Assembly: GCF_016432865.1 (NCBI RefSeq)
Contig: NC_067402.1
Span: 299,522,001 to 299,586,000 of the forward strand
DNA length: 64,000 bases
Direction of reading: 5' to 3'
Source of the DNA: Antechinus flavipes
Taxonomy: Eukaryota
Shown: positions 2,915 to 37,192 of the stretch, in pieces
How positions within the stretch are numbered: position 1 is the stretch's first letter
Layout of the letters: every line of letters starts with the position of its first letter
Notes under the pieces: model-generated
What the model was told of the DNA's origin: nothing
The model's database searches: none
Seen by the model: only the letters and a program-made list of their open reading frames with translations
Position numbers and translations under genes: made by a program

Positions 2915-3140
2915 TCTTTTTCCTGAGGTAACTGGGGTTAAGTGACTTGCCCTGGGTCACAGAGCTAGGAATTATTAAGTGCCTGAGGCCAGATTTGACC
3001 TCAGGTCTTCCTGAGTGCCGTATCCACTGTCCTACCTTGATGGTCTTGCAGAAACTAACAAAGTGTCTGAGACTGGATTTAAAACTCAGAAAGGCGGGTC
3101 TTCACCAGGCCCAGTGCTCTTAGGTACTACATCATCTAGC
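2915..3140 (-). mobile_element. CORE-type marsupial SINE (WSINE1-like), degenerate
   Basis: GGGGTTAAGTGACTTGCCCTGGGTCACAGAGCTAGG...TCTGAGGCCAGATTTGA-type core on the reverse strand. A second copy lies at ~21650-21880. Confidence 0.7.
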
Positions 3141-3888: not shown

Positions 3889-4510
3889 TGTAATGCCAGA
3901 GAAACTGAGGCAGGAGAGAGATTAGAGAGTTTTTAATATTTTATTAATGGGAGAGTAAGATTGACTGGACAGGACTCTCGTCTCAAATTATCCAGTCAGA
4001 CAGAGATAAAAATATACTGGGACCAAGGAATTCATGTTGGTCCCAGGTCTGGAGGAGACTATCATCTCAAAGAATCCAGCCTCCAGCATCCACCGCCAGC
4101 CGCCATTCTCCAGCAATGAATGGAGAATCTCTAACCTTTATATACCTTTTAGAGACAAAGAAGAGGGAAAGAGTAGGAAAGAGCGGGAAAGCCCAGTTGG
4201 AAAAGGCTATGAATCAAAAAGGAACCCAGAGACAGGATGTCTGAATACCCAGAGATAAAGATGTTAGTGAAATATCTTGGAATATTTTAGAGGGATGTTG
4301 TAAATTCTCAAGGACAGAAGATAATCAGGAAGTCTACTCTCTTGTTTATCTTGCTTGGGCTAACAATTTATAACCTTAGACTAATTGGTCCTCAGCCTTC
4401 GTGGACCAGAGGGAGATTTACAGCTTAGGGGAGTAATTAGGAGACTGAGACAAGGGAAACTTGTACAAGGAAACTGAGTCAGGACAGTTAAAGAGAACTG
4501 TGGCATAACA
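3889..4510 (-). mobile_element. Solo ERV LTR (class I-like, 4-bp TSD)
   Basis: Begins TG(TAATGCCAG) and ends (GGCATAA)CA. Flanked by AAAT on both sides (3885-3888, 4511-4514). Reverse-strand AATAAA near 3942 and TATA near 4140. Termini are the reverse complement of the LTRs at 55520 and ~58490. Confidence 0.85.
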
Positions 4511-6039
4511 AAATAACTCTTGGATTAAGGTTGTGCTTGAACTAGCATTTGGGGAGGGAGAAGGAAATGTTCCTGAAGACCACCTACTTCAACACTCTCC
4601 TTTGGGAAGTGAGAAATTCTGGGGTCTAGAAAGGAAAAGGAGCTTGCCTAATTATTGCAACTCCCTTCACATACCCACAGCTCTCAAAACATCTGCTAGA
4701 CCAATACACACTGAGCTGGAAATTCAGGAACAAAGAATAATCCCCATCTCTGTTCTGTCTGAGTTTTATCTCCACTTCTCCTCCCTGGCCTTCCAAAGAA
4801 ACGTTTGTTCTCAGAGAAAAGAGAGGGAGAATTTTGCTTGAGATATCCAGAGGAGAGACCCCAAACCCGTTTGGGTGGAGTTCCAAGTGAGACTTGAAGG
4901 AAAAAGGTTAAAGAACATCTAACTCAGTAATAAAAGAAAGAGGAAATCTTTCTTCCCCATACCTAATACTTGGTGCAAGCAGTAAAATAGCAAAAAGCCA
5001 ATCCCTCCCGCACATGTTTCTGGGAAGAAATTCTCCCTCTAACTCATCTTAGCAACAAAGCAAGAAGCTTTATAGGCTCCCAGGAACTCCCTTCTCCAGT
5101 GGCTTCCTCCCATCTGCAACAACTTTACACAATCAGTCCCTCACCTGAGAATGTTGAAGGAAGCATTTGGAAGTCGGGTCCATTACAGAGATGAGGGAGT
5201 AGGACCGCCTTGGTGAGGATTAAGCCCACCAGCACAATGTAACATGAGTTTATAGTTGTAGGCTTTCATGTGCTTGGTCTGTTCTGGGAATAAAAGAGAA
5301 GTGTTCAACTCTGAGGTACAACTGTTCTTTTTTTTGCATTGCTCAGATCACCTGCTTAATGAAGGCATTCCTTTGCTACCCAGGGATCACTGAAATCGGG
5401 TTAATATTCTTTACCAAGGGATAGCCTTTATGTGGAGTTCTGAGCCCAGCTCAGCTCAGCTTAGCTCTCTTGGCTATTGGATATTGAAACAACTTTAACT
5501 TCTGAGTGAAAATCATGTCTCCTGAGCCAGGAGTTTGCAAAAATTTGGGGTCTCCTCTTAAGACTTTGAGGACTTTCTCAAGCCACCAAGGGCTTTAAAG
5601 GTCAATGAAGGCACACTTCTGAGGTGTCTCCCAAATACTTTTCTATGTGCTGAAGGAGAATTAGACTGTCTTGAAACAAAGACTCTTTGCAGAGCTTGCT
5701 CTTTTACTTAAACTATAATAAATTTAACGCATATTTTTATAAGTTGTCCTTTTTATCTGTAATTCCTTCTGGCTGTCCTTCTGTTCTCATGGGTTTTCAT
5801 TTGGAGGAAGAGGAGCCGGATCACTGATCACCACAATGTTCCTTCTCCTCAAAACGATATAGGGAAAGGAATAAGAAAGCTACACATTCAGAAAATTCCA
5901 ACTTTGTCAATGTGTAAAAAGAAAAAAAAAGTTTCAATCTTGAATCAGTCATTTTGAATAATTATTGGTCATGTTGCTATTAATAGGAGTTCTTCTATCT
6001 TTCAAATTTTCGTGTCTGTGCAAAGCCATATTTTATACT

Positions 6040-6800
6040 AAAAATTATTCTGCTCACTTCACTCTCTTTGTTAATACAAATTATTCTGCTTACTTTACTT
6101 GCTATTTATTCATAAAAGTCTTTCTAAAATAACCCATCTTGTACTTCTTACACAATATCATATTGCATCATATACACTATTGCATTCATATACTAAGATT
6201 TGTTTAAAAATTAAACTCCATTTGATAAGTACTCTATACTATAGTTCCTATAATTTTTGTGCATATGGGTTATTTTCCGCTTTTCATGCCAGTGGCTATC
6301 TTTGGGAGTCAGAAAGTACTCACAGTTCAGTGACATTTTAGGGATCATTCCAAATTGCTTTACACTTTGGCTAGACCAATTTATAGCACCACCAAAAGTA
6401 TGTGACTGTGTTAGGTTCTCTGGGACAGGTTTCTACATTTGATATTCTCCCTTTTTGATTTACTTTTGTCAATCTGACTGAGGTAGAATTTTGCAGTTAG
6501 TTTGTATGTTTCCAGTTCTTAATGACTTGGAGCATTTTTAAATCCCCGATAAATTTTGGAGGAGGATGCATTTTTATGTGGCCATTGAGAAGTGGGCTCT
6601 CTTCTTTTGAAAACTTCTAGGTCATCCATTTCCTTGACAATTTATCAATTACAGAATTTGCTTTTCTCATATATTTCAATTGGTTACTTTCAAAGAGACC
6701 TTTATTACAGAAACTTGATGCAAAGACTTTTCTCCAGTCCACTGTTTCCCAGCTACACACTCCACCGCTATAAAAATAGTCATGGAAAATAGTTTCTGGA
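6040..6800 (-). mobile_element. Old LINE-1 3' ORF2 remnant
   Basis: Degenerate antisense L1-like text (attccaaattgctttac...tggctagaccaattta...gacttggagcatttt). Paralogous copies lie at ~18040-18380, ~24780-25540 and ~36760-37100. Confidence 0.55.
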
Positions 6801-7446
6801 ATACCATACACAACAGCCATGTTTTCTCAGTCAAGAGTTTTTTTTTTTCTGAGAGTTAGAAATTAATTGAATTAAGATTAGAGTTGGAGCTTTTTCAAAA
6901 CTTCTCAAAAGCTTTCTATTTCTCATCAGACTGGCTTTCTGTCTCACATGTTTCCTCCATCCCGATTCAGTAATATAATATGCTTTCATTAGAAGAGGGA
7001 AGTATCTAATAGGAGTATTTTCTCCTCTCCTTGTCTTATCATTTGTGTATAATATATAATGTAGGGATTTTATTTATTATCTTCAAATGAAATTAAACTA
7101 TTCATAGCAATTTTGGTTTCAATCATTTCTCCATGTTTGGGGACTCTAGTCTTAGAAAAAAAAGAATCCAAAGCAACATAGCTGAACAATTGATTTTATC
7201 AACAAGCATTTTAATAATTGCTTAGTATGTGTCACCCTGCCAAACCCTGAGGATACAAGGAGAACAAAAGAAAAGAAAAAAACCCAAACCACTCCCTGCT
7301 CAAGCAGTTCAGTCTAAACAGGAAGAAAGCATGCAGTTATGTCTAATAATATCTATCTACAAATTATATATTTTCTAGGTGTGTGTATATGTAAAACTAG
7401 ATCTTGCCTATATGTGTGTATATGTACTATGCCTATATGTACATGT

Positions 7447-7448
<2 letters not shown>

Positions 7449-7482
<34 letters not shown>
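7449..7482. repeat. (AC)n microsatellite
   Basis: Pure AC run. The paralog lies at ~26163-26198. Confidence 0.95.
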
Positions 7483-7484
<2 letters not shown>

Positions 7485-8477
7485 TAACCAGCAGTCTGTT
7501 TTCATAGCAAAGATAATTGGCAAGAAAGGTACAAGTCAAAAGTTCCTGTGGCTGTGGCTAGCCTCTGTCCATGGTCATGGGTTATGACTAAAAGAATAGC
7601 CACCTCATTTCTAGGTGAGACTATACACATGACAAAAAGCAGATAAAGGGAAGCATACACATCAAAGGAAAAGAGGGATTAGGAAAGACTTCTGGGAAAA
7701 CACTTAGCTGGGATTTGAAAAAAAGTTAGAGAATAATTTGTCCTTAATGCTTTCGATACATTTAGAGAATATTGGAAAGCATCCAGGTGATTTATAACTC
7801 CGGGTCTGTTAGGTGACTTATAAATCCAGGGTTGAGCTTCCTCGGGCAGTCAAGAGACTGACAAGAGAGAGGGTGACAATTCTGAAGTTAGTGCAAAACA
7901 GCATTTTAAAGACAGGGAGAGCTAGTCACGCTGGGCTGGCCATAGCTGCAGACATGTGCTCCATCCCCTGCTGAGCAGGGTCCCCCATTGAGGATTGGTG
8001 GTATACAAGGCTTTAAAAAGATAGCAAAGACGAGTGTCCATTGAGAGAGAAAACTGCCAAGTCTAGGTACCTAAAGAATCAGTGAATCCTCTCTAGAAGG
8101 GGAAGAAGTCATCCTTTAAAGTTGTAACTGTTTTGAATTATAAATGTCCCTAAACAGAAAGCCATCTGAGAGAAAGTAGAGTGTCACTCAGCTCAGCCCC
8201 AGCCTGACTATCAAACCCTGGTGTGGACTCACAGAAATGCTTAGTAAAAACAATTTTAAAAGGAATATATGGTTCTAACTGCCTAAAAGACCAAGAAATG
8301 GAAGCAGAATTAGCTCAGTAGAAGGTATGAAATGTGTCTGCTGGACCTTCTCACAAGCTACTATCCACTGGCATATCAGGGCTAGCAAGGGGAGGAGAAA
8401 AAGAGGAGCTAGGTATAGGAGGAAATATGCTTGGAAAAATTGGGGAGTGAGACCACCCAATATGGGGAGGGCCCTTT

Positions 8478-8918
8478 TGACCCGTCTAGCAGGTCGTCAA
8501 TCGTGAGTCTCGAAGTGGAGCATCACCGTAAGGCAAAGGCCCGTAGGGCAAAAAGCCTGTAAGGCATAGCCTGTAGGGCAAAAAGCCTGGTAACAAAGAA
8601 CAAAGGAGGGAAACTGCCAAGTGGGGTTTAAAGCAGCTCCAGTTTATTGAGGCACACAATTCAGCTTATATAGGGTGGCTCAGGAATGTCACGTATGTAG
8701 GAATGCAGTTACACAATGCACAAGGTATAGAGGAGGGGGCTGAGGTCTTGTGATGAGGGTCATAAGTCCAGGGGTCCGATATCAGATGGTGATTGATGTC
8801 AGCACATCTTGTGAGATATGAAGTTCTGGAGCCAGGGAGCGGATAACCATCTCAGCACAATGGTGTTGACACAGTTGTCATTTATTAGCTCAGACCTAAG
8901 GGTATGGGGTCCCTGGCA
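8478..8918 (-). mobile_element. Solo ERV LTR with 6-bp TSD (class II/beta-like TSD length)
   Basis: TG...CA termini with CCCTTT on both sides (8472-8477, 8919-8924). The empty site is visible in unit C (GGCCCTGTGGCTTCC, ~42895). Reverse-strand AATAAA near 8646 and TATA near 8668. Confidence 0.88.
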
Positions 8919-9195
8919 CCCTTTGGCTTCCTTAGTGGCTACCAGAAAAATCAGTGAAAAGCCAAGGGAGAGATGAGGGATGGAACAAAAGGGGTGGGGA
9001 AGAACAGGACCCGCAATCACTTTGTAATATTCGGATGGCCAAGCCCCTTGCTGAACCAACTGCTCCGAGGCCAATTATTGAAAAGTCCCCGGCTTCTATG
9101 CACGGATTTCATAAAGCAGCTGCTCTTGCCCATCGTTGAAGCCATTGTTGGCTGTATCTGGATAAAAGATTTGCGGTGTTTCCAACTTCCTCCAG

Positions 9196-9975
9196 ATGAC
9201 AAAGTCCCATTCTCTGGGGAATGGCTGTCCCAGAGCAGTCAGAAATCCTCACACCCCGACCGCGGTGACTCTGAGGCCTCCGCTGGAAGGGAAGGCCGAG
9301 GTCCGCGGGGCCTTGAGGTAGACACGGTTCTTTCAGGTCCCGATCTCTCGGAACCACCCTCTACAAGTGCCGGGACCCCACACCTACCTGAGCCACCTCC
9401 ACCGTTGGAGGTCTTTCCACCTTCAAATCCAGGTCCCTGGGTGAGGAAATTTCTCCAGAGTGGGCATTACGGACTGGCCAAGGGTCCGGCCATGACCCAG
9501 GCCCGGAAACCCCGCCCCTTCGGACAGCTTTCACCACCAAGCAGATCAGGACTCTGGAGAGCTCCTCCAAACGCCCGCACTAACTGGGCGCGGCAGAGAG
9601 GAGAAAATTGGCAGGCGGGATGCAGCTGTCTCAAGTTCAGATCAAAACCTGGGTCCAAAGTCGCCGCAAGAGCCTGAAACGCCAGTTGCAGGACTTGGGG
9701 CCCCCCCGACCCCCCTCCAGGCTTCCCCGTCCACTTTTATAGCCCCTCTATCCCAGTGCTCAGGACCACTGCCTCCGTGGGCCTGCCGTATGTGTACCCC
9801 AATTGGCCGCAGCTCCGGGGCTCCGAACTTGTCCAGGAGCTTGTTGCCGATGTCTCCTCTGCTCCCTCTGCCCTTTCCCCGGCTCCTGAAAAGTTGCTCC
9901 TCCTGCCATCGAGTCGGTGCTGGCTCCTCTGCTAAGCGGCTGTCAGACCAGGCCGCCTTCCTGGGGGCGATGTGA
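9196..9975 (+). pseudogene. VENTX: VENTX-like homeobox processed pseudogene, copy A
   Basis: ATG ACA AAG at 9196, then a 1-nt frameshift into PFSGEWLSQSSQ (resembles the VENTX N-terminal WLSQSS motif). Homeobox ~9509-9688 reads PLRTAFTTKQIRTLESSSKRPH*LGAAERRKLAGGMQLSQVQIKTWVQSRRKSLKRQLQD, against human VENTX RVRTAFTMEQVRTLE...MQLSEVQIKTWFQNRRMKHKRQMQD. TAA at 9581-9583 (homeodomain Tyr25). No intron at Q44/I45. A-rich tract at ~10229-10250. Confidence 0.85.
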
Positions 9976-10739
9976 CTTTAGAGGCCCTGGTATAATCCCC
10001 CCTGGTAGGGGGTGACTGGTACTGAGAGAGGAGAGAAAATAAGGGAGCAAGAGATAGATCCCTTCGGTAGAGAGTTTAACTCGGAAGACTTCAGTAAATA
10101 ATGGCCTGCTTTGTCTTCTGCCCCATGGAAGTACTCCATACATGAACTTGTACATATTTGCGAAATTATTTGAAGTAGATTATGAACAGAGAATTATTTA
10201 TGGACATATGAAATAATTATGTTTATTAAAGTAAATAATAAATAAAAGAATAGATTCTACAATTCTAAATGTACTTTCTCTTTTTTCCTTTCCTCTCTGC
10301 CCTTGAATGGAGAATTTCTTATTCTCCAAGAATAAGATTTTCTTGGCGGGAATATCATTCTCAGGGAATAAGTGATCTGTGGAAAGTCATTTTTTGAAGA
10401 CCCATTTTATGTATGAGGAAGGGAAGTATCAAGTAAATGTGACATCTTGCCTGGGGTTGTGACTTTCCCCAAGAAAGCTTATCTTGCTCTGAGTGGATGC
10501 AAGATCATTTGGGTTTGCAGATTAATGGAGACATTTTTGGTGATTTTACATAATTTTACTGGGTTCATTCAGGTCAAACAGAGTTCACTCTAGTCACACT
10601 AAGCTGGCCTGACAAGTTAGAGAAGTATCAAGTCTTTATCCCAAGAATCTGAATCTGCTCCATCAGACAAGTAGCACCGGTATCCTGGCCCATGACATTC
10701 TATATAGCAGGGGCAGGTAAAAAACGTGGGTAAAAGGTA

Positions 10740-10930
10740 TGGGAGATGTGGAAGAGGAGAGAAGAGGGAGCTCATGGAACATGACCCTAATTTTTTTTTC
10801 TGTAAAATGAAGTATAAGGTTCTTAGTTGAGAGAGTTGAGGGAGGGAAGCAATGAAAGGGTTGAGGAGAAGTGAGCAAGTCTGGGTGATCTGCTGTGGAG
10901 AGTGGGAAAGGGAGCCAGTGAGGGTGATCT
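10740..10930 (-). mobile_element. LINE-2 ORF2 remnant (marker of array units)
   Basis: Minus-strand translation PSTLSTKNLILHFTEKKIR resembles the L2/CR1 ORF2 motif (LSADDFASYFTEKI). Paralogs lie near 29460, 39690, 44610 and 53190. Confidence 0.55.
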
Positions 10931-12659
10931 ATTTTCTTGGAGTCACAGGGGAGAGTTGAGTGCCAGGTGGATCCCAAGGCTATTCAACAAGGATGAGCAT
11001 CTCTGATGTGAGGGCTTGCCAAATTGCTCGACATGTATTTATAGTGTTACACTTTGAATGTCAAACTTTTTATTGAGTCATTTGTTTGAGAGGATAAGAA
11101 CAATTGGTGAAGTACTCTGTAAAAGTCAAAGCTGCTTCAACGATCCCCTAGGATGCTTTTCCAGGTGAGCCCCAGTCTGGGCCTGGTCTAAGGGGCCTCT
11201 CCCTCTCCCAGAGGCCGGCTCTCTCCTATCCAGCCTATGTGTGGCCTGGTGATCCAGTATTTATAGGACCAGGGTTGTTCATCCGCAAAAAGGATCCCCG
11301 AGTTAGGGTGCAGGCAGGTCATGGACCGCTTCTGATGTTTCAGGGTAAAACAATTCCCAGCCATGTGCAGGGGAAAGGCTCCCTAGATCAGCATCCTATT
11401 TATAGCAGAAAGCCCCAGGCAGTCGGAGTAGATAACCCACATGGTGCTCCATAAACAATCGGTTCCTTCAGAAAAAGAGAGAGAACTGAAGGGAGGAGGA
11501 GAGTGGAGGTGGGGAAAGGGAAGAGAAACACCTAGGAAAGGGAAAGAGAAGATGTAAACAAGAGAGCAAGGTGGTTTTTCTCCTTGGAAACCAAGTTAGC
11601 AATTGTGCCCTCCTTGAATTCTTTATGGAAATTGCCACAGTGCCTAGGGGGGCACTGGATTTGAACCTCCAAGAAAAATAACTGGCTTGGGAATTTCTAC
11701 AGCAAGCCCCAGGATCTTGGGTTTCCTTTTATCAATCAAGCTTGGAGGGCAGGAAGAGCCTGGAGGGTGAAGGCTGTCCCATGCCCCAACCTCAAGCAGA
11801 TCTGCAAAGTTTTCTGAGATCTTTCCAATCCTGAACTTCGACCTAGATTTCTAAGCCTTGAATGGGGGTGGAAACGAGCCATTACTGAAATTTTCTGATA
11901 CTGATTCAGAAAGGGAACAGCTTGGAGGAGGAAGGATCACGAATAATCACACTCAAAGCAATGGTGCATAAATCTGAGAACTTAATTATTGGTAGGAGAA
12001 GAATGGTCTGGAATGGTCAAAGTTTGGAAAATGGAAAGTATTTTGGCAGAAATTAGGTTTAGACCAATGACTTACAGCCAAGATATTCCTGAGCGCTGTC
12101 CCAGATATCAATGTGTGAGCAAGGTCAAATAAAGGGAACGGATGCATTCCCTAGGACAGAAAGCAATTTCTGAATATTTCTCTCTTACGCCTTTTTGCCC
12201 ACAAATTATAGCCAGAGAACGAGTGCAGATTCTAACAATGGGGTTTAGAGTGGTGATTAAGGGTGTGAAGTGCGGATTGGGCAAAAGAAAGCTAGGGTGA
12301 CAAAGCTTTCTTTTTCCCCTGGGGCCTGCAGGACTGAGGACTTTAGTGCGCACTGTCCTTTGGTGCAGAAACACTGGCTCTTGGACCTTCATCCTTACCT
12401 CAGAATCCTAAGGGCAGAACTATGCTGGCCCCAGGCTATATTGTGAGGCTGGGGCCAATAACCCTTGTGGTACATGTAGAGCTTCCCCAAACTCCCAAGG
12501 GTGGGGTGTCCTGAGCTCCTAAAACACGGCCACACGGGACGCTCAAAGCTCCAGCAAGGGTAGACTAAGAGTTCCCTAAGGCGCTTGTACTGAGCGGTGG
12601 GGCTCCCCAAATGCTTTTAGGGTGGAGCTTCCAAAAAGAAAGAAGTTCCTCACACCCTA

Positions 12660-12730
12660 AAGGAGTGGGGGCGTGGTTCCGCAGAGTCTTTGTGGCCTAG
12701 GGGCGGGGATCTCCAAATCACTCTTTAGAG
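12660..12730 (+). promoter_or_regulatory. Putative TATA-less promoter of Ras-like gene A (two GC boxes)
   Basis: GGGGGCGTGG (~12667) and GGGGCGGGG (~12700) Sp/KLF-type boxes at conserved spacing in units A, B (~31385-31430) and C (~46489-46550). A CpG-rich tract follows. Confidence 0.45.
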
Positions 12731-13560
12731 CCCTAGCACTGAGCAGGAAGAGGACCTCTACTCCATTTCTTATTGTACAACTCTTAAAGACTATACCTGA
12801 ATGCGACCTGACTGGGTATTTTTACAGCTCCGAAACGGTATGTAGAGGCCAGCTGATTAGTTCATGTTAGCGGGATGTTCTGGGTGCTCATTGAGCCCAG
12901 TCTCAGTTAACAGCAATGGGGTGGGTGGCACGTGGATCCCAAGTTAGTGCCATCTTGGACTGCATCAATGCGGGAGGTATTGACGGAGCTCGGCTCCTCG
13001 TGGGGCCGGATTAGTGCGGGCAGTGCCGCTGGGCTCGCCTCCCTCCCCCCACCTTAGTTGCCTGAGCCCATACACTTTGGGTTTAGATGCAGGTTGAGAT
13101 GGGGGAGCCCAGTTTACAGCCGAGCCGGCCAGGGACTCTCGGCCCCTTTGATGCAGGAGCTGCAGACCCGGCAGCCGCCCAAACCGAAGCTCTTTGGGCT
13201 ACATTACTGTGGAGGAGCGTGGCCTGTAGAAATAATGAGCATTCTCTGGCCTCCTAGAACCTTCGGAATTGACCGCGGGGTCTTCTGGTCGGTCGGGGGT
13301 TTGAGAAGGGCGCCAGTGAATCCGAGAGTGTCTTGGAGAAGCCGGACAGAATGGGAGGGCCTGGAGCCCACGTGCTCTAATGGGTTTGGAATTGGTCAGA
13401 AGAACCAGAGGAGTCAGAGATTTTTAGTATCTGAAGTTCTTTCCCTGGGGGGAGGGTTGAACCTTGTTCAGGTGGGCCCAGAGAGCTGAAAGGGGGCGGG
13501 GAAGAGGTTTGGCAAAGAATTAAAACTGGAGGCCAGAGAAGTGACCTCCTGTGAAATGGG

Positions 13561-13588
13561 CTGACTTCTTGCAGCTTCTTCCTTGCAG
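13561..13588 (+). promoter_or_regulatory. Putative splice acceptor upstream of the Ras-like start codon
   Basis: CTGAC branch-like motif, a pyrimidine tract and TTGCAG, with AG at 13587-13588, 43 nt before the ATG. Conserved in unit C (AG at 47415-47416). Confidence 0.4.
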
Positions 13589-13631
13589 CCTGGAAAGTGA
13601 CTAGAGGCCACTTGAGCCCTTTCCAGTTCTC

Positions 13632-14192
13632 ATGGCTTCTTGTGTCCATACCTCCATCGGTGATTCAGACGGACTCACAACCAAGATGTATAAGTTGGCG
13701 GTGATGGGCACCTGTTCTGTGGGCAAGAGTGCACTGATCATGCAGTTTAGTAGGAATCATTTTGTGACGGAGTATGACCCCACGACCCAAGATTTCTATA
13801 GTAAGGATACAATGGTGGACGAAGAGCAGTGTCAGCTGGACATCATGGATACCACAGGCAATGGAGCATTTTATTATCTGAGGGATGAGTCCATAAGCTG
13901 GGGAGAGGGATTCCTCTTGGTCTATGCAGTGAATGACCTCTACTCTTTTGAGAATGTGAATTTCTTCTGGGACATTCTGCAGTGGCTCAAGGGCACCGAC
14001 CGCGTACCCGTGGTGTTGGTGGCAAACAAAGTAGACGTGACCAACAGGCTGGTGGACCCCACAATGGGCCAGGAGGTGGCCAGGAGCTTCGGGTTCCCTT
14101 ATGTGGAGACCTCAGCCAAGACTGGACAAGGTGTGGAGCAAGCCTTCCATGAGCTGGTTCGAGAAATTCAGAGGAAGCGAGCTGAGGAGTAA
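13632..14192 (+). CDS. Ras-subfamily small GTPase (ERAS-like architecture), copy A; 186 aa, C-terminally truncated, no CAAX
   Basis: All G boxes present: GTCSVGKS, T35, DTTG, NKVD, ETSAK. Collinear with HRAS at an offset of 16. A TAA at 14190-14192 precedes an in-frame tail LKILPNTEQKEACGCKCCTIQ* ending at 14258. Confidence 0.82.
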   Translation: MASCVHTSIGDSDGLTTKMYKLAVMGTCSVGKSALIMQFSRNHFVTEYDPTTQDFYSKDTMVDEEQCQLDIMDTTGNGAFYYLRDESISWGEGFLLVYAVNDLYSFENVNFFWDILQWLKGTDRVPVVLVANKVDVTNRLVDPTMGQEVARSFGFPYVETSAKTGQGVEQAFHELVREIQRKRAEE

Positions 14193-14996
14193 CTCAAGAT
14201 TCTCCCTAATACTGAGCAGAAGGAGGCCTGTGGGTGCAAGTGTTGCACCATCCAGTGAACAGGTACACCCTTATCCTGATCCTGCCCCCTAATTCCCCTC
14301 TCCCCTGGCCTAGAATATCTCCAGATCCCCTGGCCACTCCCCAGCCTTCAAGACCTTCATCTGGACCCTTCCTTCTGCCTGCTCTTCACTTCCAAGCCCT
14401 TTTGGGCCTTTTAAACAGGAGCCACTTGGAGGGACCCGTCTGTGTTTCTATATTAAGAGTTTTGTTTTGGATTTTTCCTTTTGATTCGCCTTTTGAGCAG
14501 GAATGACTTAAGTCAATGCCTGGATATCCTGAACAGGCAAGGAAAGACTCCATTTCTCCTTGAGTGCGCAGCCTCCCCCAGCCTCTCTGGCTGCCAGAGG
14601 CCCCAGAGAAAGCCAACTTCCTGGAGGCTTTCTCTCCAGTCCGACCCTCATCTTCAGCAGCCTCCTCTGCCTTCCTAGAGGCCATCTGTGGGGTTTTCTT
14701 TATTGAGCTTTCTCTTGCTCTCCCAACTGAGACCCTGCCTCCGGAGACCAGGGCAAAGGGGTTCTCTCTCCTGCCCCTGGACTTGGTGTATTTGCTGTCT
14801 GGAGCCAGGTCACCACCCCTGTTGTGTCCCAGAAGACCTTGTTTGTGGTGTTGGTGAGGAGCCCTGCTCTGAACTGGTCCCCATTCAGTGACCTTAAAGA
14901 CCAGACCGGAGGGGTGGGGGGGAGGAGGGATTTTTTTTTTTTGTTACTCATGTTGAGCGTGTTTGTTTTCAACTTGCTTATCATCTGGAGCACTTT

Positions 14997-15158
14997 TTTT
15001 GTTTTTCTTTTGTTTTCTTTTTTTTCTGAGGCGATTGGAGTTAAGTGACTTGCCCGGGCCACACTGTTAGGAAATGTTAAGTGTCTGAAGCCAGATTTGA
15101 ACTCTAGTCTTCCAAAATTTGGGGCTGATGCTGCAACCTCTGCCCATCTAGCTGCCCC
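14997..15158 (-). mobile_element. Marsupial CORE SINE (WSINE1-like) with A-tail and 12-bp TSD, in the Ras 3' UTR
   Basis: Ends CTAGCTGCCCC (reverse of the GGGGCAGCTAG start). T-rich tail at left. TSD CTGGAGCACTTT at 14985-14996 and 15158-15169. Absent at the paralogous site of unit C (~48818). Confidence 0.9.
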
Positions 15159-15611
15159 TGGAGCACTTTGAATAGCAGTGAGGGCTTTGGGCGGAATGGG
15201 GCTGCCTCCTACCAGCAGGATGCCTTTAGACATAAGTGCTATTAAAATTTGTTTTAGCAGCCAGATGCACCCCTTTAGACATTGCAAGTTGAATTACTTT
15301 AATTGCCTCCAAGAGAAGTGGAGTGGGGGGGCCTGGCTATAAATGTTCTGAGCAGATACCTTACAGCTGCAAGTCAGGTGGGAGTCTGCTAAGGAGCCTT
15401 CTGACAGGGGCATCTTTTGTATTATCTCAGGATTTATGGTGAAAAGGGCAGGGGGTGATTTTCCTGTTTCAGTTAAAAGTATTAAGGATTCTAAAAATAC
15501 CTGTTTGGTTTTAGGGGTGGGGAGTGAATGGGAAGAGGAATTCATTTTAAGGGACTTCCTTCACACTTGGATTCAAAGTTGATTCTTTTTCTTTTTCTTG
15601 GATTACTTATA

Positions 15612-15617
15612 AATAAA
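15612..15617 (+). terminator. Polyadenylation signal of Ras-like gene A
   Basis: AATAAA followed by a GT-rich downstream element (gttttggtttgtttatacgtgtgtttctgg). Conserved in B (34330-34335) and C (49206-49211). Confidence 0.6.
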
Positions 15618-16079
15618 AGTTTTGGTTTGTTTATACGTGTGTTTCTGGTAGTTTCTTATGGGTTGATATGCTTGGGGTAGGAATCACATGAGGATAGTAT
15701 GGCCTAGTGGAGAGAGAACTGGGTTTGGGAGTGAGTGTTGTAGCTGTGGGACCTTGGTTTTCAGTTTTCTCACCAGTAAGAAGTGGGGAAGGAGAAGGAG
15801 AGGGTTGGTCTAGAATCTCAGATCCCTCTTAACTTTACCAGTAGAGGGGGTCTAAATCTATGAAGCTCCGTTCAATGGGATGATAGTGATCCCTAGAAAT
15901 ACTTTTATCCATCATCTACACATCAAGTGTCATAATATTTATCTCTGATTCTATCATCTCTGTAATAATTAATCATCTCTATTAATGTCATCACTTATTA
16001 TAGCCCAGTCCTATATCATCTATTATCTCTCATCTTTTTATGTAGTTGTCATTTCTCTCTACACACTCCCTCCACCCCA

Positions 16080-17220
16080 TTTTTAATTTAACATGATCAA
16101 AAATACTCATTTTGCATTTCATAATGTTCTCTACTTCTTTGTCCAAAATTTCCTCCCTTCTGACAAGGCAGACTATTCCTTGTTCTCCTAATTTGCCTAT
16201 AATATCTCCCTTTATATTGAAATCATGAACCCATTTTGACCTTATGTTGGTGTGTAGGGTATTAGATATTAGTCAATGCCTAGGTTTTGTGCCATAGTAT
16301 TTTCCAATTTTCCTAGCCATTTTTATCCAATAGAAGTCTCAGCCCAGAAACTGGCATCTTTGGGTTTAATCAAACAATTGATCACTATAGTCATTGACCA
16401 TTTTGTCTTGTATACTTCATCTATTCCACTGATTCTCTACTCTTAGTCCAGCCAACGATTTTAAAGACTGCCTCTTAATAAATATGGGATTAGGTCCAGT
16501 ATGGCTAGGCAACCTTCTTCTTCAGCATTCATTTTACAAGATTTTGAATTCCCAAGTTATCTTCCTCTTTCTTTCCTCTACCCTCTTTTGGAAGGCAGCT
16601 ATGCTCACCACTATACCACCAACGCCCCTCTACACTCTTTTGAAGAAGAGATGTAGTTTGATCTCTTTATATCTGAGTTATCATGTAAGACACAACTCCA
16701 CATTAGTCACAGTGTGAAAGAAGAACCTGATTAAAAGGAAAAAATGAGAAAAGAAAAACAATGCTTCAATCTGCATTAAGAGTCTGTCAGTTCTATATCA
16801 GTTCTTTGCAGGTGTCTCAGATCATTCTGTTGCAGAGAAGAGCAGAATTTCTCATAGTTGATCATACAATGTTGCTGATGCTGTGCACAATGTTTTCCTG
16901 ATTCTGCTCATTTCACTTTGAGTTTGTACAAGTCTTTCCAGGTTTTTCTGAAATCTGCCTGTTCATTTCGTAGTGTACAATAATATTCCTTTATATTCCT
17001 ATAGCACAACTTATTCAGCCATTCCCCAATTGTTGGGCTTCCCCCTCAGTTTCCAATATTTTGCCACCCTGAAAAGGACTCCTATAAATATTTTTGCATA
17101 TTCACATATATGTTTATGTATTTATATCATTTCCTTTTTGTGATTTGTGACATTTATGTCCTTTCCTTATCTCTTTGGGATACAGACCTAGTAGTGGTAT
17201 TGCCCAGTCAAAGTGTATGA
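16080..17220 (-). mobile_element. LINE-1 ORF2/3' UTR fragments, antisense
   Basis: Paralogous to 1-830 and 49690-50800. The B copy translates (35569-35787) as AKYWKLKGSPTIGEWLNKLCYRNIKEYYCTLRNE, the L1 ORF2 C-terminus. Confidence 0.85.
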
Positions 17221-17229
17221 CTTATCTTA

Positions 17230-17720
17230 CATTATGTATAATGGAGATAAACTAGAAGCTTTTCCCATAAATTCAGGGTGAAACTGTGATGTTCACTGTC
17301 ACCACTTCTGTCTGACATGGTATGAGAAATGTTAACTGGCACGAAGATGAAAAGAAAATTGAGGGAATAACTATAGGAAGTCAAGAAGATTCACAATTAT
17401 CACCTTTGCAGGTGATATATTGATGTACCTAAAGAACTTAATTCAGGTAAAAATTAATTGCAATAATACTTTTAGCAAATTTGCAGGAAACAAAAATATC
17501 CACACACATCACTGACATTTTAAACTAATACCAATAAATATAGGAAACTAAAGAGAAATATCACATAAAATCACTATAAAATATATAAAATAATTTGGAA
17601 TTTCCCTACCAAGATAAATACGTAAGAATTATAAAAATACAACTGCAAGTAACTGCGTATTTGCACAGCCAAATAATTGGAAAAGTTATATATTAATTGC
17701 TCACAAAATTAAATAAAATG
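17230..17720 (+). mobile_element. LINE-1 ORF2 reverse-transcriptase fragment, sense
   Basis: AATGGAGATAAACTAGAAGCTTTTCCCATAAATTCAGGGGTG-like start (GDKLEAFPINSGV). TTTGCAGGTGATATATTGATGTACCTA translates FAGDILMYL, a degenerate FADD motif. Confidence 0.75.
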
Positions 17721-18420
17721 GTTGCTGGCAGATGTGTGCCTGAATGCAGAGAAAAGTATTCATATTAACATTTTGTATTAGGTACTAGTAGCATCCGATA
17801 GTATCAATTGAGGAAAAGGAGTTATTAGTGCTGTTATTAGTTACTCCCATTGCTCTAGGGATTTCTGGGAGCCAATGAAAGAAGGGTTTTTTGGGTAATC
17901 TCTAGAGCCATTCTTGGAAGATGCAGAGCTTAGAGTCTAGCAGAGCTTGTGCCTACCTTGTGGTGTGAGGGCCACCAGGCTAATCCTCTGGAGAAGAGTT
18001 CTTACATCTTTCCTATTTTTGTGTCTTTGCATACCCATATTTTATGATAAAAATTATTCTGCTTACTTCACGGTCTTTGTTAATATAAATCATTGTGCTC
18101 ACTTTACTTTATTTGTTCATAAAATTTTTCCTAAAACAATCCATTTTGTCACTTTTTACACAATATCATATTACATCATATACAGTATTGCATTCATATA
18201 CTAAGATTTGTTTAAAAATTAACCCACATTTGATAAGTACTCTATAGTATACATTTCCTATAATTTTATGGCCATATGGGTTACTTTTCTCCTTTCATCT
18301 CAATTGATAACTTTGGTAGCCAGAAAATACTCACAGAGCAGTGACATTTTAGGTATAGTTCCAAATTGCTTTACAGATTGGCCTATATATATGTACATAT
18401 ATAATGTCTATATGCATCAG

Positions 18421-18436
18421 TACATGTGCGCGCATG

Positions 18437-18476
<40 letters not shown>
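18421..18476. repeat. Alternating purine-pyrimidine tract (GC)n/(CA)n
   Basis: tacatgtgcgcgcatgcgcgcgcacaca... is uninterrupted alternation. The paralog lies at ~37141-37188. Confidence 0.9.
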
Positions 18477-18478
<2 letters not shown>

Positions 18479-19471
18479 GACAATAGATATAACCAGCAGT
18501 CTGTTTTCATAGCAAAGATAATTGGCAAGTACAAGTGAAAATCATTGTGGCTGGTGTGGCTAGCCTCTGTCCATGATCCTGGGTTATTCTAAAAAAATAG
18601 CCACCTCATTTCTAGGAAAGATTTTAGACATGGAAAAAAGGAGATGGAGGGAAGCATATTCTCAAAGGAGAATAGGGATTAGGAAAGACTTCTGGTAGAA
18701 GATGAACTTAGCTGGGATTTGAACAAAGCTAGAAAATAATTTGTCCTTAATCACTTCAATACACTTAGAGGATATTGGAAAGTATCCACGTGACTTATAA
18801 ATCCAGGTGTCAGCTGCACAGGTTATTTCCATGTTAGTGCAGATCCATGTCATCAAGCAAGGTGAGGGAAAATCTGAGTCTTCTGAAAAACTGGCAACAA
18901 TTATGAGGAATACACAGAAACAGAAGTTTTGAAGAGAAGAACAGACTCACTGGGGATTTTAATCACAGAGGAAAGATATCTATGGGAGAACCAAGAATCA
19001 AATTCCAAGTGGTCTGCCTCACTTTTCCTTGCTCATAGGCACGCTTTATACTCAACTTTCCCAAGTAAAAACAATACAACATCTGTCCACTTTGAAAATT
19101 TGAAGTTGGTGTCTTCTCCACCAGAAAATAATCAGTTCAGAAACTGTCTCTTCTAGGAGAAGGGCTCCTTTCTCTCTCTCTTCTTTAGTCCTATCATATT
19201 GGACTAAGAAGGTCCTCTCCTTTGGCTTATTGAAGAGAAGTCATGACTTAGTGAATATTACTATAGTGGCAGAAACTAGGTGAATCCTACAGTCTGTTTC
19301 CATAGCAGAGAACATTTGGAAAATAAAGTGAAGGTTTCAGTGCCTAATGTTGCTAACCCTTGTCCATGGTCCCGAATTGTCTAAGAAAGTGGATGCCCTG
19401 TATCTAGGTCAGCTGAGTCCCTAGAAAAATCATGCACGTGTTTCTACTGGGTTTATACCCCAAAGAGAACT

Positions 19472-20470
19472 GCTATAAATATTTTTGCACATGCATATAT
19501 ATTTATGTATTCATGTCCTTTCCTTTTTGTGTGATCTCTTTGGGATACAGACCTAGTACTGGTATCACCCAAAGTATATGCACTGTTGGTTGCTCTTTGG
19601 GCACAGCTCCAAATAACTCTAAGAATGGTTGGATCAGTTCAGGACTCCCACACTACATTAGGTGTTTCAATTTTCCCTGTCTTCAACATTTATCACTTTC
19701 CTTTTTTGTCATATTGGCCAATCTGATAGGGGTGAGGTGGTCTCTCAGAGTTGTTTTAATTTGCATTTCTTTAATCAAGTGATTTGGAGCACTTCTTCAT
19801 TTGTCTAGAGAAAGCTTTGATTATTTCATTTGAAATCTGCCTGCTCATATCCTTTGATTTATCTATTGGGGAGTAAATTTTATTCTAATAAATTTGGCTC
19901 ATAGTTCACTAATAAGGCTTTCTTGGAGGTTCTTATTGTAAAGATTGTTTTCCAGCTTTCTGCTTTCCTTCTAGTCTTGGTAGTATTTGGTTTGGTTTGT
20001 ATAAAAGCTTTTTAAATTTGATTTAATCAAGATGATTTATTTTGCATGTTGTAATGTTCTCTCTGTTTGATCAAAAATATTCCCTCTTCCCATAACTTTG
20101 ATAGATAGACTATTCTTTGCTCTTCTAATTTCCTTATCCCCCTTTATCTCTAGATCACATGGCCATTCAGATCTTATTTTAGCATAAAGTAAGAGATACT
20201 GGTCTATACATAGTTTGTGTCCAATTCCCCCCCCCCAAGTTTTCCCAGTTTTGTCAAATAGTGAGTTCTTATCCCTGAAGTCTTTAGGTTCATCAAACAG
20301 TAGAGAACTATAGTCTTTGACTATTATAACTTATGTACCTAATTTCCTTCTCTGATTCACTATTTCTTGGCCAATACCAGATGGTTTTGATGAGATCTGA
20401 TAGTGCTAGACTACCTTCCTTTGTTATTTCATCCCAGTTGTTTTCCTTGATATCGTGACCTTTTTTTCCC
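19472..20470 (-). mobile_element. LINE-1 fragment, antisense (copy of 737-1740)
   Basis: Near-identical to 737-1740. Confidence 0.85.
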
Positions 20471-22628
20471 TAATGCTCTGGAGAACATTTGGAGAGAATG
20501 CTTAGCCCCCAGGAAGGATAGAAGCAGAAGAGCCAGGAGTCTTCTTGACCTCTGTGGCCAGGCAGGGATAGAGAGAGAGCCCATGGAAGCAAGGCAGAGC
20601 TGTGTGAGAGTGTCAAGCAGTAGATTCTTTCCACCTCTTGGTCAGTCACTCTACATATTATGTGCCAGGTACTGTGCTAAGTGCTGCCACAATTGCTTCA
20701 CTTTTCTCTAAAGGTGGGAACCACTTGGCCACTCTGCTTTCCAGTTAGCTCTTGTTACTTTCACAGGCTCTAGGTAAATAAGTTAAGCCTTGTTGTAGTT
20801 TATTCTTACACATTTCAAATAAAAATATTCATGACTGATATTTTTGTCAGTCTTTTTCATCTCCTACCTCCTTCCCCATCATACTTTTATTTTCTTTTGG
20901 ATATAGAATGTAAGTTTTAGATCATTTAATCCGATTGACTTATATCACAAAGAGTTTGTGACTCACCCAAACCACACCTGACACGGCTCTCCCAGGACTC
21001 AACTGCTGTGCAAATATTAGGTGCATCTCACAAGCCAAGTAGTCTCTTTCTCATCTTTATCATAGATACAGTAAATAAAATCATGTGCTTTACTTGGTGT
21101 TGTCACAGAATGCCTGATAGAAACAACTCTTGCATCAATTTTAAGTTACTGAATCTGAGCCTTTTTTGCTTAGGGGCAGATGATCCTTACTGTCTCCTCT
21201 CTCCCACACAAGCAGTGCTGGGGAGCTCTCTAAGCATGGACTTTGGCCTGTACATGTGTTTGCATTTTTCTGTTCTGTGCTCAAGTAGGCTGCAGGTAGA
21301 AAGGAGGAACAGAGGCGGTAAGTGTCCTTCAGAGCTCCCCAGAACCAAAAAGTGGTCTGCAAGAAGACACATGGACCAAGCCTGAGTTTTACAGCATCTC
21401 TCAGTTGGAAGTGCCTTTGTGGCTACCCAGTCCAAGTAGCACTTGGACAAGAATCCCTGTATTTTACAGCCTGTGGGGAAAAGTAGCCCTCTAGCTTTAC
21501 TAGAAACCTCCCAAGAGACAGAACTCTGTCTCTTTCCACTTAAAGCAGTTCAGTCTTTGAAATGGTTCTAATGATCACAACATCTTGGCTGCTCAGGACT
21601 GTAGGATTATTATAGGTTCAGAATTTGCATTCAACTGGCATAGTCATCTTCTTTTTCCTGAGGTAACTGGGGTTAAGTGACTTGCCCTGGGTCACAGAGC
21701 TAGGAATTATTAAGTGCCTGAGGCCAGATTTGACCTCAGGTCTTCCTGAGTGCCGTATCCACTGTCCTACCTTGATGGTCTTGCAGAAACTAACAAAGTG
21801 TCTGAGACTGGATTTAAAACTCAGAAAGGCGGCTCTTCCTGACACCAGGCCCAGTGCTCTTAGGTACTACATCATCTAGCAGCCATTAAACTAAGCCAGA
21901 AGTATAATCAGTTTGTGCCTGAGGTGATGGAGTCTCCATACAAGAAGTTTCCTGCACCAAGGGAATGGAGAGCTCATAAATTGTGGGGATATTGGCTTTT
22001 ATCTCTCAGTTATCAGGGGTTAAGTAGATCCTAGAGGCAGATGAACTTCCCTTAATTAGCTTGGCTAAATTAGCAGGGCCAGGATTAGGTGGCCACTATC
22101 TTTTCTGATAACTGAGGACTAGTGTCTCCCTCCCCTTAACATCTCACAGGACACTCAGAGACACTTCAGGAAACAGAATCCCTAGTTAAGATCCTTCTGA
22201 TCTGACTAAACCAGCTCTTGGTTTGAATCTGCCCTCATAGGCACTGGGTGCTAAGGAGAGGGGGGGGGGGCTTCTTCAATAATTGAGGATTAAGGAATTA
22301 AAACGATATAGAGATAGGTATGCTGGATTTTTACTAAGGGTCTCTGGGTTGAGATCCCTGGTCTTATCCAGTTGTGTGATCTTACCCAATCCCTTCACCT
22401 TCCTTCTCAGCTACAAAAACACAATTGTACTAGATTATCTAACTCACCTAATAGCTCTTTAAAGTGGAGGTTCAAAATCCAAACAATCTCCTTTACCTGC
22501 CTTCTCTAATTAAAGTCATCAACTCAAAGAGAAACAAGGAAAAGACAGTTCTTGAATAGCCCTGATGTTAACCTTTCACTCCTACTCACCCATCCCGCTC
22601 AATCAGCTGGATCAGTTGACATTTAAAT

Positions 22629-23250
22629 TGTAATGCCAGAGAAACTGAGGCAGGAGAGAGATTGGAGAGTTTTTAATATTTTATTAATGGGAGAGTAAGA
22701 TTGACTGGAGAGGACTCTCGTCTCAAATTATCCAGTCAGACAGAGATAAAAATATACTGGGACCAAGGAATTCATGTTGGTCCCAGGTCTGGAGGAGACT
22801 ATCATCTCAAAGAATCCAGCGTCCAGCATCCACCGCCAGCCGCCATTCTCCAGCAATGAATGGAGAATCTCTAACCTTTATATACCTTTTAGAGACAAAG
22901 AAGAGGGAAAGAGTAGGAAAGAGCGGGAAAGCCCAGCTGGAAAAGACTATGAATCAAAAAGGAACCCAGAGACAGGATGTCTGAATACCCAGAGATAAAG
23001 ATGTTAGTGAAATATCTTGGAATATTTTAGAGGGATGTTGTAAATTCTCAAGGACAGAAGATAATCAGGAAGTCTACTCTCTTGTTTATCTTGCTTGGGC
23101 TAACACTTTATAACCTTAGACTAATTGGTCCTCAGCCTTCGTGGACCAGAAGGAGATTTACAGCTTAGGGGAGTAATTAGGAGACTGAGACAAGGGAAAC
23201 TTGTACAAGGAAACTGAGTCAGGACAGTTAAAGAGAACTGTGGCATAACA
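22629..23250 (-). mobile_element. Solo ERV LTR (copy of 3889-4510)
   Basis: TG...CA termini with AAAT TSD. Near-identical to the unit A copy. Confidence 0.85.
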
Positions 23251-26161: not shown

Positions 26162-26201
<40 letters not shown>

Positions 26202-34329: not shown

Positions 34330-34335
34330 AATAAA
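34330..34335 (+). terminator. Polyadenylation signal of Ras-like gene B
   Basis: AATAAA plus GT-rich downstream element, as in A and C. Confidence 0.6.

Positions 34336-37148: not shown

Positions 37149-37192
<44 letters not shown>

What the first reader, a model, noticed from the sequence alone, without database searches (positions are those of the whole stretch)
14190..14258. Copies A and B have lost the membrane anchor through a stop placed exactly after the G domain
Codon 187 is TAA in A and B but GAG in C and in the 38.5-kb fragment, a two-nucleotide difference. The 21 downstream codons remain in frame and still encode ...EACGCKCCTIQ*, so the truncation is relatively recent. The product would be a complete but unprenylated, cytosolic G domain with activating-type residues. 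Cytosolic activated Ras is known to act as a dominant inhibitor by sequestering effectors, so A and B could be antagonists of C rather than simply dead. The truncated version is the one most recently duplicated.
Basis: partly seen in the sequence, partly recalled or inferred. Interest (0 to 1): 0.72.

Follow-up and report, generated by a model that had tools for sequence, protein, structure and literature searches.

The report
Old, conserved anchorless marsupial Ras genes
Two Ras-like genes of the yellow-footed antechinus end at a stop codon that removes their lipid membrane anchor; the stop is real but old, being shared by at least seven intact genes in antechinus and Tasmanian devil, so these are probably working anchorless Ras proteins and not freshly broken copies.

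Summary
Codon 187 is TAA in copies A (14190-14192) and B (32910-32912) and GAG in copy C and the 38.5-kb fragment. The 21 codons after it are still in frame and end in CCTIQ.

The inference that the truncation is recent does not hold. The window is Antechinus flavipes, in the published marsupial gonad Ras (MgRas) array. The same TAA, in the same context (TAA CTC AAG ATT), is found in two more antechinus genes and three Tasmanian devil genes, one of them in two independent assemblies. The nearest full-length relative, in Sminthopsis, has GAA, so a single G>T change before the two genera split is enough.

The seven G-domain ORFs have no indel (about 14.5 expected from the flanks) and no stop (about 5 expected). 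Their dN/dS is 0.49-0.62, the same as in full-length orthologue pairs. Amino-acid changes avoid family-invariant sites. The stop falls at the end of helix α5.

I read these as a retained, soluble, probably GTP-locked Ras subclade. A and B are a young duplicate pair of it. The antagonist role is untested.

One point is unexplained: the tail after the stop evolves like coding sequence (8 synonymous changes, 4 replacements, 1 stop). This hints at stop-codon readthrough.

The scan had already met this MgRas array in adjacent windows, but not this shared stop.

The parts
13632..14189 (+). Copy A: 186-codon ORF, made of an 18-residue N-terminal extension and a complete Ras G domain
   Evidence: ORF list. 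Pfam PF00071, 4.7e-44. Structure model with pLDDT 88.6 and helix α5 at residues 168-185.
14190..14192 (+). TAA at codon 187 of copy A (HRAS position 171)
   Evidence: The same codon and context occur in six other genes.
14193..14258 (+). Post-stop tail of A: 21 in-frame codons (three cysteines upstream of the CAAX box CTIQ) followed by the ancestral TGA
   Evidence: Substitution pattern is 8 synonymous, 4 replacement and 1 nonsense. ML ω is 0.13.
14180..14211 (+). 32-base block that is invariant in all seven truncated genes and straddles the TAA
   Evidence: It is the longest invariant run in a 3.6-kb alignment of the seven loci.
32352..32909 (+). Copy B: 186-codon ORF, one base different from A (R41K)
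32910..32978 (+). TAA at codon 187, the 21-codon tail and the TGA of copy B
722..38171 (.). Two tandem units of about 18.7 kb (722-19471 and 19457-38171), 98.8% identical, carrying A and B
   Evidence: Self-BLAST.
47461..48087 (+). Copy C: full-length paralogue (208 codons, GAG at codon 187, CAAX box CTIQ), 87% identical to A at the DNA level
38499..38669 (+). 3' fragment of a full-length-type copy (codons 153-209, GAG at 187)

Best explanation
A and B are a young tandem duplicate pair, about 1% diverged. They belong to an old subclade of the marsupial gonad Ras (MgRas) family that has so far been seen in antechinus and devil. In this subclade a single G>T change (GAA to TAA) at codon 187 removed the hypervariable region and the CAAX box. 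This happened before Antechinus and Sarcophilus split. Selection has since kept the 186-codon G-domain ORF open in at least four antechinus and three devil genes. The product is therefore most likely a working, non-prenylated, soluble Ras G domain. It still has all its nucleotide-binding motifs but lacks the residues needed for GTP hydrolysis (C12, S13, T59, N61), so it should sit in the GTP-bound form. Shown here: the age of the stop, that it is shared, the integrity of the ORFs, an unchanged level of protein constraint, and a complete fold. Inferred: it stays off membranes, and it acts there by binding effectors or regulators of the anchored MgRas paralogues (a sponge or antagonist) or through cytosolic partners of its own. 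Its derived switch residues (T36, G62, W102 in HRAS numbering) fit an altered partner set.
For: The TAA with identical context occurs in A, B, Af2 (L003), Af3 (L008), devil Sh1 (L001 and L002, two assemblies), Sh2 (L004) and Sh3 (L005). Four of the proteins form a clade with 100/98 support, and a full-length Sminthopsis gene with GAA at codon 187 is their weakly supported sister. The near flanks carry 28 indel loci in 1077 columns, which predicts about 14.5 in the 558-base ORF; none is seen. About 5.3 nonsense changes are expected and none is seen. ML dN/dS between species is 0.49-0.62 for truncated pairs and 0.58-0.62 for full-length orthologue pairs. The branch model finds no significant difference in ω between the truncated crown and the full-length background branches (0.80 vs 0.60, p = 0.22). 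Only 2 of 38 variable residues fall on the 47 family-invariant positions, against 10.6 expected (p = 1.7e-4). All five G boxes are intact in six of the seven genes. The model shows a full Ras fold ending with helix α5. NCBI annotates these genes as protein-coding. The family is reported as gonad-expressed (PMC12866920). Ras mutants in which the CAAX cysteine is changed are retained in the cytosol (10.1101/704312).
Against: I obtained no expression or protein evidence for these particular copies. The runs found were contigs of unrecorded kind, and the paper reports only 4 of 23 antechinus MgRas genes as expressed in gonads. Taken alone, dN/dS of the G domain across the seven copies is 0.80 and not significantly below 1. 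Gene conversion among paralogues (Sh3 is a mosaic) could mimic part of the avoidance of invariant sites. The conserved N-terminal extension has a cysteine at position 4 that might give another membrane anchor, so 'cytosolic' is not proven. The coding-like conservation of the tail is not expected under a purely truncated product.
Confidence: 0.6

Rival explanations
1. Dual-product gene through stop-codon readthrough. Most ribosomes stop at UAA-187 and make the soluble form. A small fraction reads through and makes a 208-residue form that gains the hidden CAAX box and three cysteines, and so a membrane anchor. This would be analogous to the hidden peroxisomal signal of LDHBx and MDH1x.
For: Since the stop arose, the tail has taken 8 synonymous changes against 4 replacements and 1 nonsense change. 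The neutral synonymous share is 0.25, giving a binomial p of 0.005, and none of 52 non-coding 63-base windows from the same loci is as extreme. ML ω of the tail is 0.13, lower than 1 (p = 0.0007) and lower than in the translated tails of full-length paralogues (0.60, p = 0.03). All three upstream cysteines and a CAAX box are kept in all seven copies. The longest invariant block of the locus straddles the stop, and the base after the stop is C. The precedent is in PMC4359377 and PMC5133446.
Against: There are only 13 substitution events. UAA is the least leaky stop codon and the context is not the known UGA CUA G motif (PMC12233894). Devil Sh2 has a second in-frame stop in the tail. Nucleotide conservation continues for about 150 bases past the TGA, so part of the signal is regional. 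No stable or covarying RNA structure follows the stop (z = +0.49). Several tail variants also occur in same-species full-length paralogues, so conversion or parallel change could bias the counts.
Confidence: 0.15
2. The truncated copies are non-functional relics. Their ORFs look intact only because divergence is low and gene conversion from working paralogues keeps repairing them.
For: dN/dS of the G domain across the seven copies is 0.80 and not significantly below 1, and variable sites are spread evenly over codon positions (40/32/43). Within antechinus, A against Af2 gives ω above 1. Sh2 has lost the G of the DxxG motif and has a second stop in the tail. Sh3 is a mosaic.
Against: There are no indels and no stops in 558 bases across seven genes, against about 14.5 and 5.3 expected. 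Full-length paralogues, which nobody would call dead, have the same dN/dS. Invariant sites are avoided. Conversion from full-length donors would also tend to erase the TAA and the neighbouring ATT codon, yet both are invariant. The type has been duplicated again twice.
Confidence: 0.12
3. One reading: a recent truncation private to A and B, or an assembly error at the TAA.
For: The tail is still in frame. A and B are nearly identical, so one error or one recent mutation copied by the duplication could give both.
Against: The same TAA occurs in Af2 and Af3, 4.7 Mb away, and in three devil genes, one of them in two assemblies. A contig of a further, coded organism (X6, record 22) spans the site, and its four differences are all accounted for outside codon 187.
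Confidence: 0.02

Closest known systems
MgRas, the marsupial gonad Ras family (Mol Biol Evol 2026, PMC12866920)
   Same: It has a single coding exon, a Ras-subfamily G domain and a tandem-array location in a dasyurid. Its nearest relatives are the antechinus, devil and dunnart 'ras-like / NRas-like' proteins. The window lies in the A. flavipes array.
   Different: The paper gives gene counts, clades, lengths of 155-390 residues and expression. Its main text never mentions the CAAX box, a shared premature stop or an anchorless subclade. Its supplements were not available.
ERas (eutherian ES-cell-expressed Ras)
   Same: It is an intronless Ras paralogue with an N-terminal extension and germline residues that make it constitutively GTP-bound. 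The paper places ERas as sister to a clade containing the MgRas genes. The biochemical description of ERas is from my own knowledge.
   Different: ERas keeps its CAAX box and works at the membrane. A and B lack the box in the annotated product.
Laboratory cytosolic Ras mutants (HRAS/NRAS C186S, KRAS C185S) and unfarnesylated oncogenic Ras
   Same: These are a complete G domain without a lipid anchor and are retained in the cytosol (10.1101/704312). From memory, not checked here: activated unfarnesylated Ras is reported to hold Raf in inactive cytosolic complexes.
   Different: Those are engineered point mutants that keep the hypervariable region. Here a natural stop removes the whole region, has been kept since before the two genera split, and sits beside divergent switch regions.
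Natural Ras-family GTPases without a CAAX box (RERG, RIT1/2, NKIRAS, RASL11; from memory)
   Same: They show that Ras-family proteins can work without prenylation.
   Different: Those are old, separate families. Here the loss happened inside a young family whose other members keep the anchor, and the lost anchor is still legible behind the stop.
Functional translational readthrough that exposes a hidden targeting signal (LDHBx, MDH1x; PMC4359377, PMC4207609, PMC5133446)
   Same: A targeting signal lies in frame just behind the stop, and the extension shows a coding-like pattern of conservation.
   Different: The stop is UAA CUC and not UGA CUA G, and no extended protein has been seen.

Membership tests
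MgRas (marsupial gonad Ras) | Ras-subfamily G domain with at least four of the five G boxes | tested here: met
   Pfam Ras 4.7e-44. Best solved relatives are H/K-Ras at about 1e-52. GxxxxGKS, T35, DTTG, NKVD and SAK can be read directly. The model shows a Ras fold.
MgRas (marsupial gonad Ras) | Coding sequence in a single exon | tested here: met
   Uninterrupted ORF at 13632-14192.
MgRas (marsupial gonad Ras) | Member of the marsupial-only clade, within a tandem array | tested here: met
   All close hits are marsupial proteins, as the tree also shows. The window lies at about 299.5 Mb of A. flavipes CM028221.1, among further copies. The paper's own named sequences could not be obtained.
MgRas (marsupial gonad Ras) | Expression almost confined to gonads | not tested
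   The runs found are contigs of unrecorded kind.
Membrane-anchored classical Ras (H/N/K-Ras, ERas) | C-terminal CAAX box in the translated product | tested here: not met
   The ORF ends ...KRAEE at codon 186. The CAAX box CTIQ lies 18 codons behind the TAA.
Membrane-anchored classical Ras (H/N/K-Ras, ERas) | GTPase switch residues G12, G13 and Q61 | tested here: not met
   These are C, S and N in A and B, by the alignment to HRAS with an offset of 16.
Functional translational readthrough genes | Leaky stop context (UGA CUA G type) | tested here: not met
   The context is UAA CUC AAG. UAA is the least leaky stop (PMC12233894).
Functional translational readthrough genes | Extension conserved as coding sequence and carrying a functional signal | tested here: inconclusive
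   Tail ω is 0.13 (p about 0.001) and the CAAX box is kept in 7 of 7 copies. However, there are only 13 events, one copy has a second stop, and the regional conservation runs on past the TGA.
Functional translational readthrough genes | Extended protein detectable | not testable with these tools
   This needs ribosome profiling, mass spectrometry or a reporter assay.
Pseudogene | Frame disruptions accumulating in the remaining ORF | tested here: not met
   No indels and no stops in seven copies, against about 14.5 and 5.3 expected.

The most novel reading that the evidence does not exclude
The UAA at codon 187 is a regulated gate and not an end. A conserved 32-base context lets a small share of ribosomes read through, so each of these genes makes a major soluble GTP-locked Ras and a minor lipid-anchored one. 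This would be the first case of a hidden CAAX membrane anchor exposed by stop-codon readthrough.
Probability: 0.15. Interest if true: 0.85.

Novelty: new variant of a known kind. Interest (0 to 1): 0.58.

Why it matters
Ras biology rests on the rule that Ras must be lipid-anchored to signal. This is a natural case in which an 'activated' Ras paralogue lost its anchor. It has nevertheless been kept intact, and repeatedly duplicated, in two dasyurid genera since before they split, next to anchored sisters. That offers a ready-made system for asking what a soluble GTP-locked Ras does in vivo, for example as a sponge for effectors or as a cytosolic signal. It also refines the MgRas family that was proposed as relevant to dasyurid cancer susceptibility: about a fifth of the dasyurid clade-A genes may not act at membranes at all. 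If the tail signal is real, it adds a new type of readthrough-controlled localisation.

Tried and rejected
1. Assembly error was rejected, because the same stop occurs in seven genes, two species and two devil assemblies.

2. Recent origin was rejected for the same reason. The in-frame tail is compatible with flank divergence of about 10%.

3. Using G-domain dN/dS alone to prove function was not decisive. ω is 0.80 across the seven copies (p = 0.26 against 1), and the whole family runs at about 0.6. I relied instead on ORF integrity and on the avoidance of invariant sites.

4. A readthrough-promoting RNA structure was not found. The folding z-score is +0.49 and there is no covariation.

5. I considered that the G>T change created a 5' splice donor (GGA|GTAACT). 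The site is a poor match on the exon side and at +5, and NCBI models end at the TAA. I left this as untested.

6. Public reads gave only Logan contigs of 100-300 bases, of unrecorded kind. They gave no expression evidence and no clean confirmation for A and B themselves. For X3, record 12 has two unlisted differences that I could not place.

7. The paper's supplements, which hold the gene lists and per-gene expression, are not held.

8. Devil protein P0022, a full-length gene with the same LKIL tail, is not on record as DNA.

9. The 234-codon ORF upstream of A and B has no Pfam match.

Full report
**What is in the window.**
The stretch at 14190-14258 lies at the 3' end of an uninterrupted ORF of 186 codons, 13632-14192 on the + strand. 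A BLAST of this gene against the window finds four related pieces:
- copy A at 13632-14258;
- copy B at 32352-32978, differing from A at 1 of 627 bases;
- copy C at 47461-48087, 87% identical to A;
- a 3' fragment at 38499-38669.

The alignment shows TAA at codon 187 in A and B, and GAG in C and the fragment. In A and B the stop is followed by 21 in-frame codons that end in the CAAX box CTIQ and the family's normal TGA. A and B sit in two tandem units of 18.7 kb that are 98.8% identical.

**What the gene is.**
- Pfam calls a complete Ras domain (4.7e-44).
- The best solved relatives are H- and K-Ras, and the top hits are G12C mutants because the gene itself has Cys at position 12.
- The offset to HRAS is 16 residues, so residue 186 corresponds to HRAS 170 and the stop to HRAS 171. 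This is four residues past the usual G-domain boundary at residue 166; that boundary is from my own knowledge.
- An AlphaFold model built on a 40-sequence family alignment has mean pLDDT 88.6. It shows the full Ras fold, with helix α5 spanning residues 168-185 of 186 and a disordered N-terminal extension.
- An earlier scan note pointed to the MgRas family. I read the paper (PMC12866920). It describes single-exon, marsupial-only, gonad-expressed Ras genes that are expanded in dasyurids, with 23 in the yellow-footed antechinus.
- The main text does not mention the CAAX box or a shared premature stop. The supplements are not held.
- The word search and contig look-ups place the window on Antechinus flavipes CM028221.1 at about 299.5 Mb.

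**The stop is old and shared.**
The protein search returned other proteins that end at the same ...AEE: a 186-residue antechinus protein (P0002) and 186-, 168- and 226-residue devil proteins (P0003, P0004, P0023). A cluster look-up added a second antechinus protein, P0122. I fetched their DNA.
- All of them carry TAA at codon 187 with the identical context GAG GAG TAA CTC AAG ATT, followed by the same type of tail.
- The devil gene Sh1 has it in two independent assemblies.
- There are thus at least four such genes in antechinus: A and B, plus Af2 and Af3. Af2 and Af3 lie 4.7 Mb away from A and B, 13.4 kb apart from each other, and differ at 4 of 627 bases.
- There are at least three such genes in the devil.
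- In a protein tree of the G domain, four of the proteins form a clade with 100/98 support. Its weakly supported sister is a full-length Sminthopsis gene whose codon 187 is GAA. One G>T change is therefore enough.
- The third devil gene, Sh3, has a G domain from elsewhere in the family joined to the TAA-type 3' end. It is a mosaic that points to gene conversion.
- A contig from a further, coded organism (X6, record 22) spans the site. Its four differences are all accounted for by listed positions outside codon 187.

The TAA therefore predates the Antechinus-Sarcophilus split. From memory I put that split at roughly 10-15 million years; I did not check this here. The A/B duplication is about a tenth as old, with 1.2% divergence against about 10-11% flank divergence between the species.

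**Why the in-frame tail does not show recency.**
- Between the species, truncated copies differ by 7-9% in the ORF, by 4-5 of 63 bases in the tail, and by 9-12% in the flanks.
- At that divergence an intact 63-base frame is not surprising. The flanks predict about 1.8 indel loci and 0.6 stops in the tail, and the data show 0 and 1.

**Are the truncated genes alive?**
- The near flanks of the seven loci carry 28 indel loci in 1077 alignment columns. This predicts about 14.5 in the 558-base ORF. None is present (P about 5e-7).
- Of 146 inferred substitutions, about 5.3 should have made a stop. None did (P about 0.005).
- ML dN/dS between antechinus and devil truncated genes is 0.49-0.62. Two full-length orthologue pairs give 0.58 and 0.62.
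- A branch model finds no significant difference between the truncated crown (0.80) and the full-length background (0.60) (p = 0.22). It also cannot separate 0.80 from 1. dN/dS alone is therefore not decisive in this fast-evolving family.
- Amino-acid changes within the truncated clade avoid the 47 positions that are invariant in 21 full-length dasyurid paralogues. Two of 38 variable positions fall on them, against 10.6 expected (p = 1.7e-4).
- All five G boxes are intact in six of the seven genes. Devil Sh2 has lost the glycine of the DxxG motif.
- The clade has its own fixed or near-fixed switch residues: T36, G62 and W102 in HRAS numbering.
- The truncated type has been duplicated again twice in antechinus.

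Together this shows selection for an open, folded G domain after loss of the anchor.

**How it most likely works.**
- Shown: a complete G domain, with intact nucleotide-binding motifs, without the residues needed for GTP hydrolysis, and without the hypervariable region or the CAAX box.
- From established knowledge: Ras lacking the CAAX cysteine is not prenylated and stays in the cytosol (10.1101/704312).
- Inferred: the product is a soluble, GTP-locked Ras. It binds effectors or regulators away from the membrane, either damping the anchored paralogues such as C or signalling through partners of its own.

Nothing here tests that last step. The conserved N-terminal extension with Cys4 leaves a small chance of a different anchor.

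**An unexplained feature: the tail looks translated.**
- By parsimony on the flank tree, the tail has taken 8 synonymous changes, 4 replacements and 1 nonsense change since the stop arose. The neutral synonymous share is 0.25, which gives a binomial p of 0.005. None of 52 non-coding 63-base windows from the same alignment is as extreme.
- ML gives ω = 0.13 for the tail. This is below 1 (p about 0.001) and below the 0.60 of the translated tails of full-length paralogues (p = 0.03).
- All seven copies keep the three cysteines and a CAAX box.
- The longest invariant run in 3.6 kb of aligned locus is a 32-base block straddling the TAA.

Against a readthrough reading:
- UAA is the least leaky stop and the context is not the known high-readthrough motif (PMC12233894).
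- Sh2 has a second stop in the tail.
- Nucleotide conservation runs on for about 150 bases past the TGA.
- There is no structured RNA element after the stop.
- Several variants recur in full-length paralogues.
- The count is only 13 events.

I give readthrough about 15%. The precedent of a hidden targeting signal behind a stop is LDHBx and MDH1x (PMC4359377, PMC5133446).

**Comparison and novelty.**
- The family itself is already published.
- What is new is a conserved anchorless subclade inside it. It makes up roughly a fifth of the clade-A genes in each of the two species, and the anchor is still legible behind the stop.
- Natural CAAX-less Ras relatives exist (RERG, RIT, NKIRAS; from memory), and cytosolic Ras mutants are a laboratory staple. 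I therefore rate this as a new variant of a known kind.
- The scan had already met this MgRas array in adjacent windows, but none of those notes reports the shared stop.

**Limits.**
- I have no expression or protein data for these copies.
- The read tools returned only short contigs of unrecorded kind.
- Only three annotated dasyurid genomes could be reached.
- Gene conversion blurs orthology and dN/dS.

Noticed in passing
protein P0015 (A. flavipes, 212 aa; not in the window): Another antechinus MgRas gene has lost its CAAX box in a different way. Its tail reads as a frameshifted version of the usual ...CGCKCCTIQ end. Anchor loss may therefore be recurrent in this family.
   Followed up: no
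L004:9947-10573 (devil gene Sh2, P0004): This truncated copy has Cys in place of the DxxG glycine (HRAS G60) and a second in-frame stop (CAG to TAG) inside the tail. It may be the one member that is decaying. NCBI starts its model at the second Met, although the upstream ATG is intact.
   Followed up: partly
L005:3740-4366 (devil gene Sh3, P0023): This is a mosaic gene. Its G domain groups outside the truncated clade, but its 3' end carries the TAA, the LKIL tail and a CAAX box changed to CIIQ. This suggests gene conversion between paralogues. The NCBI model adds an upstream spliced exon.
   Followed up: partly
protein P0022 (devil, UniProt G3VMA8, 199 aa): This is a full-length devil protein with Glu at position 187 followed by exactly the tail type of the truncated clade (LKILPNTEQREACGCKCCTIQ). 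It may be a donor or recipient of conversion, or a reversion. Its DNA was not on record.
   Followed up: partly
window 8973-9677 and 27693-28397 (+); diverged copies at 43441-44007 and 51983-52591: An open 234-codon ORF lies about 4 kb upstream of both A and B, with shorter diverged copies in the older units. It has no Pfam match.
   Followed up: partly
window 13632-13685 (codons 1-18) and the same region in all copies: The N-terminal extension MASCVHTSIGD is highly conserved across clade-A MgRas genes (89% invariant columns among the seven truncated genes) and has a cysteine at position 4. It is disordered in the model. It could be a second lipidation or interaction site.
   Followed up: no
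window 56360-57020: This is a block of internal direct repeats, with self-matches at offsets of about 60-290 bases and about 80% identity. Long ORFs on the minus strand run through it.
   Followed up: no
A (window 13632) against Af2 (L003:10001): Within antechinus, the two truncated lineages differ by 19 residues but have little synonymous change (ML ω 1.7, NG86 1.3). This may mean diversifying selection or conversion after duplication. The numbers are too small to test.
   Followed up: partly
proteins P0055 (Trichosurus, 162 aa) and P0045 (Macrotis, 213 aa): Ras-like proteins of a possum and a bilby that were returned by the same search also end without a CAAX box in their annotations. They may be independent anchorless forms or partial gene models.
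   Followed up: no
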